A stretch of 32,000 nucleotides of DNA. Origin: Wallemia ichthyophaga EXF-994. Its lineage: Eukaryota; Fungi; Basidiomycota. Under the pieces are notes generated by a model. It was given only the letters and a program-made list of their open reading frames with translations. It searched no databases and was not told where the DNA came from. The stretch is taken from assembly GCF_000400465.1 (NCBI RefSeq), contig NW_008806274.1, positions 210,244 through 242,243 on the forward strand. The letters run 5' to 3'. A program made the translations under genes and the position numbers. This document shows, one piece after another, positions 6,211 through 12,940 of this stretch (within the stretch, counting starts at the first letter, position 1; each line of letters opens with the position of its first letter).

Positions 6211-7852
6211 TCATCTTCCCAAAACCCCCATCATGGCATCGACAGTGAGGAATTTCTCTCTCAACTTGCCATGGTCTTTGCCATTATCGATCTCGGCCTG
6301 GTTAATACGCAGCCAATCGGACCATTTGACAGCCTGATGCTCGACAACAGGTGGTACGCCTGGGAGGGGGGATGTAGAAGGAGCCCAATCGAGATGAGAA
6401 GCGTTTGTGAAGGAAACACCAGCTGCCTCGTCCTCACCGCTCTCACCTTCAACCTGATCGCTGTGCAGATCCGAGACAATAGTATCAGCGACGCTATACG
6501 AGTCGTACATAGTAGACGCGATGACGCCGACAGGCCCTCGACTCGCCCAGCCTGTGGAGTAAACGTTGGGTATCTGCAGTGAGTGAGGTGAGTGAGATGA
6601 GACACATTTCAATCACCACGGAACCCACATTAACTCCATCTTCACCTATAACTCTCCCGCCGGAGTTACGTATGACGCCGCGTGAAGTGTCGAAGGGGAT
6701 GTTGCCTAGTGGGTGCGCCCTGTATCCTATACTCTCTATCGCGAGGTCGTACTCTTCTTCATGTGTTTGGGCTGTGGGCGTAGCGAGTACCCGTGCTGGC
6801 GTCTGCGTTGCTGGCTCACCACCCACTACACTCGTTGAGGGTGGTGTTTCGGTGAGTTTGTTCACTGCAAACGATATGTGTGTGAGGTGGTCCTTATCTT
6901 GCTTGCTGTGGAAATGTGTCGGGGAGAGAAGGAAGCGCAAGCCCCAAGTTTTAGCAGCGTCGTGCATCCCACACTTGCTGCCATCAGCCAGGAGATTGAG
7001 AATGCGTTTTTTAGCGCGCCATTCGCGGTCATTGGAGGCATGCTGATCGCCGTGCATGATGGCATGGTGAATCGCGTCACTCGCCTCGCTGACGCCCCCG
7101 CCCACACCCACGCTCTTCATAGCGACGTCTGGGAGATGCATCATTTCACGCGTCTCCTTGGCCGTGAAAGCCACCTGGGCAGGACCGCGGCGGCCGACGA
7201 GATCGACGTGATCGATGGAGGCGTGTTGGAGGGAGTGGAGGACACTCGATGGGATGTCAGTGTGTGAGAGAGCGTGTGCGCTGCGGTTGGTGGTCAGCAG
7301 AACACGCGCTATATCCAACCCCACATTGCCCTGGCCGATGATGGCGACTTTGCGCGCGCGCGAGAGGTCCGCGGAGAGAGAATCGTGGAGGTGTGTGTAG
7401 TCGGGGTGGCCATTGTACCAGCCAACTAGATCGGCAGCAGAGTACACACCGCGTAGTCGCCGTGATGAACCGACTGAGCCGGGGATGCGGAGGTGGGTGG
7501 GTTGAGAAGCACCGTAGCTGAATGCCAAGTGGGTGTAGTGCTTGGCGAGGAGGGAAAGGGATATATCATTGTTCTTGGTACTGTCACCAACTGAGACACC
7601 GCCGTAAAACTTAAATCTATTATCACTGGCAGCTCTGCTGAAGGAATTGACGCAATTCTTTACATCAGGGTGATCAGGCGCTACGCCATACCTCACTAAT
7701 CCAAACGGCACGGGTAATCGCTCGTACATGTGGATAGCGTGGTTGGGGTTGTAAGGGAGCTGGTTGAGTAGTCGCTGGGTTAGGTAGAATGCAGAAGGAC
7801 CAGAGCCAAGTACCGCGAGTTTGAACGGCTTTATTGGCTGATTAAAACCCAT
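6211..7852 (-). CDS. ARH1: NADPH:adrenodoxin (ferredoxin) oxidoreductase
   Basis: complement(join(6211..6573,6629..7852)); 55-nt intron. LAVLGSGPSAFY, PFGLVRYGVAPDHPDVK, IIGQGNVGLDIAR, GRRGP, GWASRGPVGVIASTMYD. First ATG 7852; the ORF track uses TTG 7870. Confidence 0.95.
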
Positions 7853-7882
7853 GACAGGTACTCTCAACAAGCAACATCCATC

Positions 7883-10006: not shown

Positions 10007-11011
10007 TTAAAGCAATCCTTGCTTGTACTCGTTGACGTAAGCGTAGTCGCACTCACGCATTTCTACCTCAATTGGTGCTGATTTGGGTTTATGCGAGTAT
10101 TTTGATTCTTTCTTGCGCGTTTGTGAGCGTGTTTGGTATCTCGATGTAGATGTAGATGCAACTGACTCGTCTTGCTCATCTGCCACCTCTTGCTGTTGCT
10201 CATTGAGGGTGTACTGGTAAATGAAATCAGCCGTGTGTGTACGTTTACGCTTTGTTTCGTGTGAGTGCGAGGGAGAGTCGACAAGGACATCACTTTCATC
10301 AGTGAGATACTGTTTCTTTTTGCCCCTGGCCTTGCCCTTGACTTGCCCTCTACCTCTAACCCGACCGCTACCTCTTCCTCTTCCCCACCTCTACTCACAA
10401 CCTTCTTCGAGTGAGCGGGCTGCAAGTCAATCCCAACTGGTTCTTCTTGCTGGTCGCCAAAAGCGTGTTGGACGGCGTTTGGGTTGGCGGAAGAAGTCGT
10501 GAGTGTGCGTTTCCTCTTGGGTGTGGGTGCTTATGGGAGAATGTATATCTAAACGAAAGGAAGTGCGACTGTGATTGGAGTTAAGCATAGTCATTGTACT
10601 CCTAAAACACCTGATAATCTGGTATTTGGAAGGAGGTAAAGGTATCATAAACTGCCTCTTTGCGTTGGTGGCAGAGGGAGTTGAAGCCAGGGATGCTGTG
10701 AAGTGTGAGTTTGACTTTGAGTAAAGTCAAACAAACACCCACTCCAATAAGAGTGATAGACGCTGTTTATGTTATGCAGTTGATTTACTGTAACGCATTT
10801 CTAATGACGATACACGTAGCCATATTTCTCGGAGAATTTCACTCGCACTCCTAATCTTAACTCTCCATATCCAATCATTGTGCCTAAGTGGGGGTAGAGA
10901 GGGGTAAGACTATGAGATGGTGTGAGTGTATGTAATTATAAACTAACCTGTATATGGTTATGGTTCATTACAATGTGATCTACCACTTGGTACTGCTTCT
11001 ACTTTGTATTC
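10007..11011 (-). pseudogene. Disrupted PARP-type zinc-finger (Hpz1-like) gene
   Basis: Splicing 10884..10947 (GTTAGT..TAG) and 10696..10738 (GTGTTT..CTCAC..CAG) gives EYKVEAVPSGRSHCNEP*PYTGTMIGYGELRLGVRVKFSEKYGYVYRH*KCVTVNQLHNINSVYHSYWSGIPGFNSLCHQRKEAVYDTF, matching the zf-PARP pattern (SGR..C..C..GELRLG..RHWxC..GFxxL). Stops at 10958-10960 and 10801-10803; second Cys is TAT (10952-10954). The basic low-complexity tail needs frame changes and ends at TAA 10007-10009 before a GT-rich 3' region. Confidence 0.7.
10709..10732. repeat. Perfect inverted repeat, 10-bp stem with 4-nt loop
   Basis: GTTTGACTTT-GAGT-AAAGTCAAAC, inside a predicted minus-strand intron. Confidence 0.9.
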
Positions 11012-11100
11012 CAACAGTTTGTTTGGTGTGTTTGCTGTGATTGTTGTGAATGCTGTCGCTACTGCTATTACTACTGCTGCCGCTGCTATGATGACTTTAA

Positions 11101-11577
11101 TTAATCTGATTTCTCTGTTTGCTCTGTTTGCTCTGTTTGCCGCGTCTGCTGCTCTTTATTAAATCTCTCAAGGAGATCTGTGTACTTGGAAGACTTAAAG
11201 ATATGATCTTGTTGATAAGTTTGATTTATTGGTGGTATTATTGGTTTTGGTTGTGTGATGAGATTGTTATCATTGAATATCTCCGCCAAGCGCTCTTTGA
11301 CCGTGTGGGTTACTGCACTTGGAAATATTTCTAAAACTTCAACAAGTCTAATTATGTCTTTGTATGATAATGCCTGCTTGGATTCATTCGCTGGTTTCAA
11401 TACTCCCACTATATCTAGCAATCTATTCAGATCACGCGTTGCTCCTTCTGCATCTCCTATGGGTAGTGCACTTGGTATTGATTCTTTTGGCCATTGAAAT
11501 GATAAATCATTTACATTGTTACTCTCACATAACTCGCGTAAAAGTAACTCGGATTTATTTCTTTGCTTTTGATTCAT
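11101..11577 (-). CDS. Hypothetical protein (158 aa)
   Basis: Uninterrupted ATG-started ORF in AT-rich DNA, divergent from YKE2 (95-bp spacer). No family recognised; only a faint resemblance to the soluble part of Vma12. C-terminal QTE x3 from 9-nt repeats at 11113-11139. Confidence 0.55.
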   Translation of the reverse strand: MNQKQRNKSELLLRELCESNNVNDLSFQWPKESIPSALPIGDAEGATRDLNRLLDIVGVLKPANESKQALSYKDIIRLVEVLEIFPSAVTHTVKERLAEIFNDNNLITQPKPIIPPINQTYQQDHIFKSSKYTDLLERFNKEQQTRQTEQTEQTEKSD

Positions 11578-11672
11578 CGTTGTTATTGAATAAGAGAGTA
11601 TTTAAATCAATTAAGTGAAAATTTAATTTATATAGTTGGATGACCGCAATTCCTCACACCAACACACTCACC

Positions 11673-12055
11673 ATGGATACAGAATATCAACAGTTAACTC
11701 AAAATCTTGATAACTTGGTTGAAGTGAGGCAGAAGTTACAAGTACAATTCAATGAGAATAATCAAGTTAAGGATGTTAGTTGGGTGTGATTAGGTGTGAT
11801 TGAAATCAAGCTAACACAACACACAAACCCCAGGAATTCAACAAACTCACTCCTAATAACACCATTTACAAATTAGTTGGCCCTGCTTTAGTCGAGCAAG
11901 ATCAACATGAATCGAAACTTAACGTTGAAAAGCGCTTAGATTTCATAAAAAGTGAGATTGATAGAACTGAATCTGAGATTGAATCTGGGCAGAAAACAAT
12001 CCAATCGATACAGCAATCTATCAGTCAACAGACTCAACAAGAGTCTACAGAATAG
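11673..12055 (+). CDS. YKE2: Prefoldin subunit 6 (beta type; Gim1/Pfd6)
   Basis: Not in the ORF track. join(11673..11774,11834..12055); 59-nt intron GTTAGT..GCTAAC..CAG. RQKLQVQFNENNQVKDEFNKL..IYKLVGPALVEQD..NVEKRLDFIKSEI. Confidence 0.92.
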
Positions 12056-12101
12056 AACACATAATTCATATATTTATATCATTTCCTTTTCTACACTTAA
12101 C

Positions 12102-12940
<839 letters not shown>

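What the first reader, a model, noticed from the sequence alone, without database searches (positions are those of the whole stretch)
10611..11011. PARP-type zinc-finger gene broken only by UA-containing codons in its core: pseudogene, RIP-like damage or editing-dependent gene
After removing two introns the domain aligns without gaps to the zf-PARP pattern, but the codon at the H-W-x-C tryptophan is TAG (10801-10803), the second Cys ligand is TAT (10952-10954) and a TAA lies two codons before it (10958-10960) (seen). (a) TGG>TAG, TGT>TAT and a hypothetical CAA>TAA are all CpA>TpA changes on one strand or the other, the Neurospora-type RIP context, odd for an apparently unique gene in a basidiomycete. 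(b) All three have U 5' of an A, so A-to-I editing would give Trp, Cys and (double edit) Trp; stop-to-Trp restoration is established in Sordariomycete sexual development but not in this lineage. Inferred frameshifts in the flanks favour plain pseudogenisation (c). This is the strongest candidate for new biology in the window.
Basis: partly seen in the sequence, partly recalled or inferred. Interest (0 to 1): 0.75.

Follow-up and report, generated by a model that had tools for sequence, protein, structure and literature searches.

The report
Dead PARP-type zinc-finger gene in Wallemia
This is the decayed remnant of a small PARP-type zinc-finger gene in the salt-loving fungus Wallemia ichthyophaga: it is intact in two sister species and evolves neutrally here, so it is an ordinary pseudogene and not a case of RNA editing or RIP.

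Summary
On the minus strand at 11014-10611 lies a zf-PARP domain (Pfam E 2.8e-9) with TAA (10960-58), TAT at the second zinc-binding Cys (10954-52) and TAG at the Trp of RHWKC (10803-01). The window is Wallemia ichthyophaga, identical at this locus to reference strain EXF-994.

The same syntenic slot in W. mellicola and in another Wallemia species holds intact five-exon genes of 220 and 253 aa. Both score above Pfam's zf-PARP threshold.

Against these, W. ichthyophaga also has:
- TTG in place of the start ATG;
- a further TAA (10533-31);
- a frameshift in exon 5.

All 14 W. ichthyophaga sequences compared carry the three stops, the Tyr codon and the frameshift. One lineage adds another stop. 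One strain adds a 1-nt deletion, and that strain still has ATG.

Diversity in the remnant is 3.5% segregating sites, against 0.78% in the adjacent PheRS-beta gene (2.9% at its synonymous sites). pN/pS is 0.66 against 0.05.

CpA>TpA changes are not enriched (7/131 against 63/1173). A-to-I editing cannot mend the start codon or the frameshift, nor restore the ancestral residue at either TAA.

Verdict: a unitary pseudogene of an Hpz1-like gene, mis-annotated as coding in GenBank. Low interest.

The parts
11012..11014 (-). Former start codon, now TTG. It is ATG in both intact orthologues and still ATG in one W. ichthyophaga strain (L016).
10948..11014 (-). Exon 1 remnant, 67 nt as in both orthologues: LEYKVEAVPSGRSHCNEP*PYTG. 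It holds the first zinc-binding Cys.
10958..10960 (-). In-frame TAA where the orthologues have Lys (AAG) or Arg (AGG).
10952..10954 (-). TAT (Tyr) at the second zinc-binding Cys. It is TGT in both orthologues.
10884..10947 (-). Intron 1 (GTTAGT...TTAG, 64 nt). Its splice signals are still canonical.
10739..10883 (-). Fused exons 2+3. The roughly 100-nt intron 2 of the orthologues is absent, in frame. Reads TMIGYGELRLGVRVKFSEKYGYVYRH*KCVTVNQLHNINSVYHSYWSG.
10801..10803 (-). In-frame TAG at the Trp of the RHWKC zinc-ligand motif. It is TGG in both orthologues.
10696..10738 (-). 43-nt intron (GTGTTT...CACAG), phase 2 as in the orthologues.
10611..10695 (-). Exon 4: IPGFNSLCHQRKEAVYDTFTSFQIPDYQ, the C-terminal part of the zf-PARP domain.
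10549..10610 (-). Intron 4 (GTGTTT...TTTAG).
10007..10548 (-). Exon 5, the charged tail. It carries an in-frame TAA at 10533-10531 where the closer orthologue has Gln CAA. It also carries a frameshift between 10402 and 10351, probably at the GGGG run near 10385 beside a degenerate hexamer repeat. The ancestral stop is TAA 10009-10007.
11015..11100 (-). 86-nt low-complexity spacer between the upstream orphan ORF and the dead start codon.
11101..11577 (-). Context, not part of the pseudogene. This intact 158-aa Wallemia-restricted ORF lies directly upstream on the same strand. Its stop is 86 nt (here), 19 nt or -11 nt (overlapping) from the zf-PARP start in the three species.

Best explanation
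This is a unitary pseudogene in Wallemia ichthyophaga, one with no sign of a surviving functional copy. It is the decayed orthologue of a small stand-alone PARP-type zinc-finger protein, with an N-terminal zf-PARP domain and a charged tail, architecturally like fission-yeast Hpz1.

The gene was functional in the common ancestor of Wallemia and still is in W. mellicola and another Wallemia species. In the W. ichthyophaga lineage it lost function and has since gathered ordinary point mutations and a slippage frameshift.

Shown: the lesions, their presence in every strain compared, the intact orthologues and the neutral polymorphism pattern.

Inferred: that the locus makes no functional protein, and the order of events. 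The stops, the Cys>Tyr change and the frameshift predate the coalescence of the sampled strains. The start-codon loss is still segregating.
For: 1. Synteny and orthology. The order PheRS-beta | zf-PARP | orphan ORF | prefoldin | adenylate kinase is conserved in W. mellicola (L004/L005) and a Logan Wallemia assembly (L006).
2. Intact orthologues. Both species yield uninterrupted five-exon genes of 220 and 253 aa with canonical splice sites. zf-PARP scores are 53.3 and 46.9 bits, above the gathering score of 39.3.
3. Lesions in W. ichthyophaga against these: ATG>TTG, Lys/Arg>TAA, Cys>Tyr at a zinc ligand, Trp>TAG, Gln>TAA, and one frameshift. The two halves of exon 5 hit in frames -3 and -2.
4. 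Presence across strains. The three stops, the Tyr codon and the frameshift are in all 14 W. ichthyophaga sequences compared.
5. Continuing decay. The L008 lineage adds CAG>TAG at 10195. L016 adds a 1-nt deletion at 10825 inside the finger, and still has ATG.
6. Neutral diversity. There are 35 segregating sites in 1008 bp (3.5%). PheRS-beta has 0.78% overall and 12/407 = 2.9% at synonymous sites. pN/pS is 0.66 (19 nonsynonymous, 8 synonymous) against 0.05. Within the finger alone I count 7 nonsynonymous, 2 synonymous and 1 frameshift from the table.
7. Annotation. The two deposited protein models splice around the stops, have no zf-PARP hit and disagree with each other. Nine other assemblies have no gene model here.
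8. Genetic code. TAA and TAG terminate conserved neighbouring genes at conserved C-termini, so the code is standard.
Against: - No RNA or protein data were available, so absence of expression or translation is inferred.
- Between species dS is saturated, so no classical dN/dS could be computed.
- The W. ichthyophaga-branch dN of the finger is 3.2 times the other branches. That is inside the spread of control genes (0.3-4.7 times), so long-term acceleration is not shown.
- The intron splice signals and about 130 codons of tail ORF are still open, which is compatible with recent death but does not prove it.
- The Fisher test of N:S against pooled flanking genes is only p = 0.065.
Confidence: 0.93

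Rival explanations
1. Editing-dependent gene: A-to-I mRNA editing turns UAG into UGG (Trp) and UAU into UGU (Cys), and double-edits the UAA codons, so a working zinc finger is made in some life stage.
For: - Both G>A lesions at conserved residues would be restored exactly by A>I at 10802 and 10953, and both adenosines follow U.
- In predicted folds, A10953 sits at position 3 of a 7-nt hairpin loop with U at -1, an anticodon-loop-like geometry. A10802 also lies in a 7-nt loop. Only 17% of UA adenosines in the window fall in 5-9-nt hairpin loops.
- Stop-correcting editing with a preference for U at -1 and hairpin loops is established in filamentous ascomycetes (PMC11156358).
Against: - Editing cannot create the missing AUG, cannot fix the exon-5 frameshift, and cannot restore the ancestral residue at either TAA (Lys/Arg at the first, Gln at the second). 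Double editing there would give Trp.
- The adenosines of the first TAA are predicted to be base-paired.
- The finger evolves neutrally within the species (7 nonsynonymous, 2 synonymous, plus a frameshift deletion in L016), including loss of the conserved Arg of the SGRS motif in one strain.
- G>A is simply the commonest transition class. Every stop codon begins with U, and UAA and UAG have A next, so the 'UA' pattern is built into the ascertainment.
- The hairpin finding is post hoc and the stems are weak (about 5 bp, MFE -8 kcal/mol over 61 nt).
Confidence: 0.02
2. RIP-like hypermutation: a homology-dependent C>T mutator acting at CpA killed the gene.
For: - TGG>TAG, TGT>TAT and CAA>TAA (10533-31) are all CpA>TpA on one strand or the other.
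- TpA/ApT over the gene span is 1.05, the highest 1-kb value in the window (mean 0.74, sd 0.10) and above the usual 0.89 RIP cut-off (a value from my own knowledge of the literature).
- (CpA+TpG)/(ApC+GpT) is 1.06, near the usual 1.03 cut-off.
Against: - Over all W. ichthyophaga-branch changes, polarised by the two orthologues, CpA>TpA is 7/131 in this gene and 63/1173 in 14 control ORF alignments (odds ratio 0.99, p = 1). GC>AT transitions as a class are also not enriched.
- The intact orthologues already have high TpA/ApT over the gene span (0.86 and 0.88; 0.94-1.0 in the finger part). The index therefore mostly reflects the gene's own composition plus relaxed selection.
- Two lesions involve A>T transversions: ATG>TTG, and AAG/AGG>TAA.
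- No second copy lies in the window.
- Three of the five transition routes from a sense codon to a stop are CpA>TpA by construction.
- The RIP-like hypermutation reported in basidiomycetes is in transposable elements, mainly in Pucciniomycotina (PMC3318451, abstract only). From my own knowledge its target there is TpCpG, not CpA.
Confidence: 0.02
3. Still a coding gene, as annotated in GenBank: J056_000031 (210 aa) or E3P89_01887 (239 aa), a shortened protein without the zinc finger.
For: - Two deposited models exist.
- The last ~60 codons of the ancestral tail are well conserved with L006.
- The second TAA can be skipped by a downstream AG acceptor, as the P0001 model does (my reading).
Against: - The two models use different starts, frames and introns. 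They read ancestrally coding sequence out of frame or splice it out, and have no Pfam domain.
- MAKER produced no model at all in nine other assemblies (annotation method in PMC6738226).
- The L008 lineage has a new stop in the ancestral tail frame, and the tail has 8 nonsynonymous to 4 synonymous polymorphisms.
Confidence: 0.03

Closest known systems
Schizosaccharomyces pombe Hpz1, a stand-alone PARP-type zinc-finger protein (PMC3435320)
   Same: The intact Wallemia orthologues share the architecture: about 220-253 aa, a single N-terminal PARP-type zinc finger, and a charged low-complexity C-terminal tail. Hpz1 is 246 aa. Cells lacking it survive but are sensitive to UV in G1 and to hydroxyurea, so loss of such a gene is plausible.
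   Different: The Wallemia finger has CX5C rather than CX2C and a shorter linker to the His. The W. ichthyophaga copy is dead.
Pfam zf-PARP (PF00645), as in PARP1 and DNA ligase III
   Same: Domain-level homology. The orthologues score 46.9 and 53.3 bits over profile positions 1-85 and have a CCHC ligand set.
   Different: No catalytic or ligase domain is attached. The W. ichthyophaga sequence has three of the four ligands, two stops inside the domain, and scores 38.0 bits, below the 39.3 cut-off.
Stop-codon-correcting A-to-I editing genes of Sordariomycetes (reviewed in PMC11156358)
   Same: A UAG at a conserved Trp codon, with U at -1, in a predicted hairpin loop.
   Different: Those genes have otherwise intact, selectively constrained ORFs whose only defects are editable. 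This locus also has a lost start codon and a frameshift, which are not editable, has two UAA codons whose ancestral residues editing cannot restore, and evolves neutrally.
Neurospora-type RIP
   Same: Three of the lesions are CpA>TpA changes, and the local TpA/ApT index is raised.
   Different: No duplicate was found, there is no CpA>TpA excess over control genes, and transversion lesions are present.

Membership tests
zf-PARP domain (PF00645) | Profile score at or above Pfam's gathering threshold (39.3 bits) | tested here: not met
   The W. ichthyophaga conceptual translation scores 38.0 bits, E 2.8e-9. The intact orthologues score 46.9 and 53.3 bits and pass. So this is homologous but degraded.
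zf-PARP domain (PF00645) | Complete Cys-Cys-His-Cys zinc ligand set | tested here: not met
   The orthologues have C15, C21, H44 and C47, the only possible CCHC set in their N-terminal region. W. ichthyophaga has Tyr (TAT 10954-52) at the second Cys.
Unitary pseudogene | Homology and conserved synteny with a functional gene in relatives | tested here: met
Unitary pseudogene | Disabling mutations in the ancestral reading frame | tested here: met
   Start-codon loss, three premature stops, one frameshift and one zinc-ligand loss. All but the start-codon loss are present in the 14 strains compared.
Unitary pseudogene | Neutral evolution | tested here: met
   Segregating sites are 3.5% here, against 2.9% at PheRS-beta synonymous sites. 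pN/pS is 0.66 against 0.05. There are extra strain-specific stop and frameshift lesions. Between-species dN/dS could not be tested because dS is saturated.
Unitary pseudogene | No intact paralogue elsewhere in the genome | not testable with these tools
   No whole-genome search of W. ichthyophaga was possible. No second copy lies in the 32-kb window. A protein search with the intact orthologue returned only the local model.
Editing-dependent (stop-correcting A-to-I) gene | Every ORF defect can be repaired by A>G | tested here: not met
   The TTG start and the frameshift are not editable, and editing cannot restore Lys/Arg or Gln at the two TAA codons.
Editing-dependent (stop-correcting A-to-I) gene | Purifying selection on the rest of the ORF | tested here: not met
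   pN/pS is 0.66 overall. The finger has 7 nonsynonymous, 2 synonymous and one frameshift variant.
Editing-dependent (stop-correcting A-to-I) gene | RNA-DNA A>G differences at the stop codons | not testable with these tools
   No RNA reads were accessible. All Logan contigs recovered are collinear with the genomic DNA.
RIP-mutated sequence | Excess of CpA>TpA transitions relative to the orthologue or background | tested here: not met
   7/131 against 63/1173, odds ratio 0.99, p = 1.
RIP-mutated sequence | RIP composition indices beyond the usual thresholds | tested here: inconclusive
   TpA/ApT is 1.05 (above 0.89), but the substrate index is 1.06 (not at or below 1.03). The intact orthologues are already at 0.86-0.88 for TpA/ApT.
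RIP-mutated sequence | A duplicated partner sequence | tested here: inconclusive
   None in the window. The rest of the genome could not be searched.
Hpz1-like stand-alone PARP-type zinc-finger proteins | Single N-terminal zf-PARP domain, charged tail, about 250 aa, no other domain | tested here: met
   Met by the intact orthologues, against the Hpz1 description in PMC3435320. Sequence-level orthology to Hpz1 was not tested.

The most novel reading that the evidence does not exclude
The two G>A lesions (UAG at Trp, UAU at the zinc-binding Cys) are edited back at the RNA level by an anticodon-loop-type adenosine deaminase. A10953 sits at position 3 of a predicted 7-nt hairpin loop with U at -1. 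On this reading the locus is, or was until very recently, an editing-dependent gene in a basidiomycete with no known sexual stage.
Probability: 0.02. Interest if true: 0.75.

Novelty: new member of a known kind. Interest (0 to 1): 0.15.

Why it matters
Mostly as housekeeping. XP_009265704.1/EOR04698.1 (J056_000031) and the E3P89_01887-type models are artefacts that splice around stop codons, and the locus should be flagged as a pseudogene. The W. mellicola models also miss the zinc-finger exons of a real gene.

Biologically it adds one documented gene loss to a 9.6-Mb genome already known for its low gene count (PMC6738226). The lost gene is an Hpz1-like protein, a type linked in fission yeast to UV and replication-stress tolerance.

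It is also a cautionary example. 'UA-containing' lesions at Trp and Cys codons look like an editing or RIP signature, but they are what ordinary G>A transitions and the composition of stop codons produce.

Tried and rejected
- Between-species dN/dS: rejected because dS is saturated (pS 0.71-0.86).
- Three-taxon branch dN: the W. ichthyophaga branch of the finger is 3.2 times the others, but control genes range from 0.3 to 4.7 times, so this does not discriminate.
- Protein searches with the W. ichthyophaga reconstruction and with the intact L006 protein returned only the two W. ichthyophaga gene models. No wider family picture and no paralogue test came from them.
- A PDB sequence search with the intact finger gave no hit at E <= 1, so ligand positions rest on the Pfam match and the orthologue alignment.
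- The more distant relative (L009-L011, PheRS-beta 62% identical) has different synteny and no zf-PARP in the recovered flanks.
- Variant genetic code: rejected. TAA and TAG end conserved neighbours at conserved C-termini.
- Assembly error: rejected. 14 independent assemblies agree, and the population study reports coverage above 200x (PMC6738226).
- Fusion of the upstream orphan ORF with the finger by splicing: no consistent frame relation or intron was found across the three species. The Met start of the finger is conserved in both intact orthologues.
- Structure prediction was not used. The intact orthologue sequences are not eligible inputs, and the W. ichthyophaga sequence contains stops.

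Full report
**What is in the window**

On the minus strand between 11014 and 10007 lies a five-exon-type gene remnant. Its first 99 codons match the PARP-type zinc finger. The orthologue-guided reading gives 38.0 bits, E 2.8e-9, just under the gathering score of 39.3.

Neighbouring ORFs are ordinary intact eukaryotic housekeeping genes: isopropylmalate synthase, PheRS-beta, adenylate kinase, CDP-diacylglycerol synthase, Cse1 and XPB. They end in TAA, TAG or TGA at conserved C-termini, so the genetic code is standard.

**Which organism**

A protein search with the reconstructed product returned only two proteins, both 'hypothetical protein' models from Wallemia ichthyophaga. They are J056_000031 of strain EXF-994 (210 aa) and E3P89_01887 (239 aa). 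The window is 100% identical to the EXF-994 reference over the 4.9 kb compared.

The two models differ from each other in start, frame and introns. They splice around the stops and have no zf-PARP hit. Nine further W. ichthyophaga assemblies have no gene model at all at this locus.

**Orthologues**

I used the adjacent PheRS-beta gene as an anchor and fetched the syntenic loci of W. mellicola (L004/L005) and an unnamed Wallemia assembly (L006, Logan SRR25399871). The order PheRS-beta | zf-PARP | small ORF | prefoldin | adenylate kinase is conserved.

In both species the slot holds an uninterrupted five-exon gene with canonical splice sites, 220 aa and 253 aa long. zf-PARP scores are 53.3 and 46.9 bits, above threshold. 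The donor of intron 2 is uncertain by a few bases in both.

Their products begin M-x-Y-(K/R)-(I/V)-E-A-A-P-S-x-R-x-H-C-R-G-P-(K/R)-P-C and contain R-H-W-K-C. This gives a CX5C...HX2C ligand set followed by a charged tail. That is the architecture described for fission-yeast Hpz1: 246 aa, an N-terminal PARP-type finger and a tail biased to acidic residues. Cells lacking Hpz1 were studied and are sensitive to UV in G1 and to hydroxyurea (PMC3435320).

**Lesions in W. ichthyophaga relative to the orthologues**

1. Start ATG>TTG (11014-12).
2. AAG/AGG (Lys/Arg)>TAA (10960-58).
3. TGT>TAT at the second zinc-binding Cys (10954-52).
4. TGG>TAG at the Trp of RHWKC (10803-01).
5. CAA (Gln in L006)>TAA (10533-31). 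A downstream AG acceptor, as used by the P0001 model, could skip this one.
6. A frameshift inside exon 5. tblastn of the L006 protein hits the first half of this exon in frame -3 (to 10402) and the second half in frame -2 (from 10351), whereas in L006 it is one open exon. The shift lies beside a degenerate hexamer repeat and a GGGG run.

Intron 2 of the orthologues (about 100 nt) is absent, in frame, in W. ichthyophaga. After KCVT the exon continues as VNQLHNINSVYHSYWSG to 10739, and a 43-nt intron follows.

**Population evidence**

I compared 14 W. ichthyophaga sequences with the window: the EXF-994 reference, ten GenBank assemblies of the 2019 population study, and three Logan assemblies.

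- All 14 carry the three stops, the Tyr codon and the frameshift, so these are neither assembly errors nor rare alleles.
- The start-codon loss is polymorphic. L016 still reads ATG. The same strain has its own 1-nt deletion at 10825 inside the finger.
- The L008 lineage has an extra CAG>TAG at 10195 in the ancestral tail frame.

Diversity across the region:

| Region | Segregating sites |
|---|---|
| Remnant (1008 bp) | 35 (3.5%) |
| PheRS-beta, all sites | 0.78% |
| Prefoldin | 0.78% |
| Flanking intergenic and spacer DNA, pooled | 6/373 (1.6%) |
| PheRS-beta, synonymous sites | 12/407 (2.9%) |

In the ancestral frame the polymorphisms are 19 nonsynonymous to 8 synonymous, giving pN/pS 0.66. 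PheRS-beta has 2 to 12, giving 0.05. In the finger alone I count 7 nonsynonymous, 2 synonymous and one frameshift, including loss of the conserved Arg of the SGRS motif in one strain. The locus is drifting. The published study reports coverage above 200x (PMC6738226), so these variants are unlikely to be sequencing noise.

**RIP**

I polarised W. ichthyophaga-branch substitutions with the two orthologues. CpA>TpA changes are 7 of 131 in this gene and 63 of 1173 in 14 control ORF alignments from the same window (odds ratio 0.99, p = 1). GC>AT transitions overall are not enriched either.

The gene span does have the highest TpA/ApT in the window, 1.05 against a mean of 0.74 and sd of 0.10. But the intact orthologues already sit at 0.86-0.88. 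The second RIP index, 1.06, does not pass the usual 1.03 cut-off. No second copy lies in the window.

The 'CpA' look of the lesions is largely ascertainment. Three of the five transition routes from a sense codon to a stop are CpA>TpA by construction. Two lesions involve A>T transversions.

**Editing**

A>I at 10802 and 10953 would indeed restore Trp and Cys. In predicted folds both adenosines lie in 7-nt hairpin loops. A10953 sits at loop position 3 with U at -1, which resembles an anticodon loop. About 17% of UA adenosines in the window lie in 5-9-nt hairpin loops. This is the only observation in favour of editing. It is post hoc and rests on weak stems.

Against it:
- Editing cannot supply an AUG or repair the frameshift, and at the two TAA codons it could only give Trp where the ancestral residues are Lys/Arg and Gln.
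- The adenosines of the first TAA are predicted to be base-paired.
- The finger shows no purifying selection.
- New disabling mutations are segregating.

Known stop-correcting editing concerns otherwise intact, constrained genes of filamentous ascomycetes during sexual development (PMC11156358).

**Timing**

Between species dS is saturated, so dN/dS is not available. The finger's W. ichthyophaga-branch dN is 0.265, against 0.071 and 0.096 on the other two branches. That is 3.2 times the others, within the spread of control genes (0.3-4.7 times).

Splice signals are preserved and identity to the orthologues in the finger exons is 46-70% in the tblastn pieces. This points to a loss that is recent relative to the long W. 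ichthyophaga branch but older than the coalescence of the sampled strains.

**Conclusion**

This is a unitary pseudogene of an Hpz1-like PARP-type zinc-finger gene, mis-annotated as coding. It is ordinary biology. Its main value is annotation clean-up and one documented gene loss in a reduced halophile genome.

The most interesting side observation is the orphan ORF immediately upstream on the same strand. It is Wallemia-restricted, with only two homologues among 1.84 billion representative proteins. Its stop codon is 86 nt from the finger's start codon position in W. ichthyophaga and 19 nt in L006. In W. mellicola it overlaps the finger's start codon region by 11 nt. This suggests a tightly coupled, possibly bicistronic pair whose downstream member has died in W. 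ichthyophaga.

Noticed in passing
window 11101-11577 (-); L004 about 11103-11568; L006 11157-11603: An intact 158-aa ORF with no Pfam hit lies directly upstream of the zf-PARP gene on the same strand in all three Wallemia species. It has only two homologues in 1.84 billion representative proteins. Its stop is 86 nt (W. ichthyophaga) or 19 nt (L006) before the finger's start, and overlaps it by 11 nt in W. mellicola. This may be a bicistronic or overlapping gene pair. The EXF-994 annotation has no model for the ORF.
   Followed up: partly
window 11105-11140: A 9-nt tandem repeat (TCTGTTTGC x4) lies in frame at the 3' end of the orphan ORF, where it encodes QTE repeats. It varies in copy number among W. 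ichthyophaga strains (L014 +18 nt, L016 +9 nt, L015 -9 nt).
   Followed up: partly
window 10739-10883 versus L006 10789-11023 and L004 10767-11000: W. ichthyophaga lacks, in frame, the roughly 100-nt intron 2 that is present in both intact orthologues. This is an intron loss that probably predates the gene's death.
   Followed up: partly
window 10953 and 10802: In predicted RNA folds, A10953 (TAT) is at position 3 of a 7-nt hairpin loop with U at -1, which resembles an anticodon loop. The stem uses intron-1 donor bases. A10802 (TAG) is the last base of another 7-nt loop. The stems are weak and the test is post hoc.
   Followed up: partly
L004 10140-10804 (W. mellicola GCA_004918835.1); L007 and L008 gene models: There are annotation problems. 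The W. mellicola 176-aa model omits the zinc-finger exons of a real gene. The W. ichthyophaga models J056_000031 and E3P89_01887 splice around stop codons. Nine other W. ichthyophaga assemblies annotate nothing at the locus.
   Followed up: yes
window 10347-10394: A degenerate hexamer repeat (CCTCTA x8 on the + strand, an Arg/Gly-rich tail on the coding strand) sits where the exon-5 frameshift lies. It is a likely site of replication slippage.
   Followed up: no
window 6494-7870 (-): A 458-aa ORF, part of a 528-aa annotated gene, has no Pfam hit. It shows 12 nonsynonymous to 6 synonymous polymorphisms within W. ichthyophaga (pN/pS 0.65), so it is a fast-evolving gene next to PheRS-beta.
   Followed up: no
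window 11000-12500: This is the most AT-rich stretch of the window (36% GC against about 46% elsewhere). It covers the orphan ORF, the divergent promoter region and the prefoldin gene.
   Followed up: no
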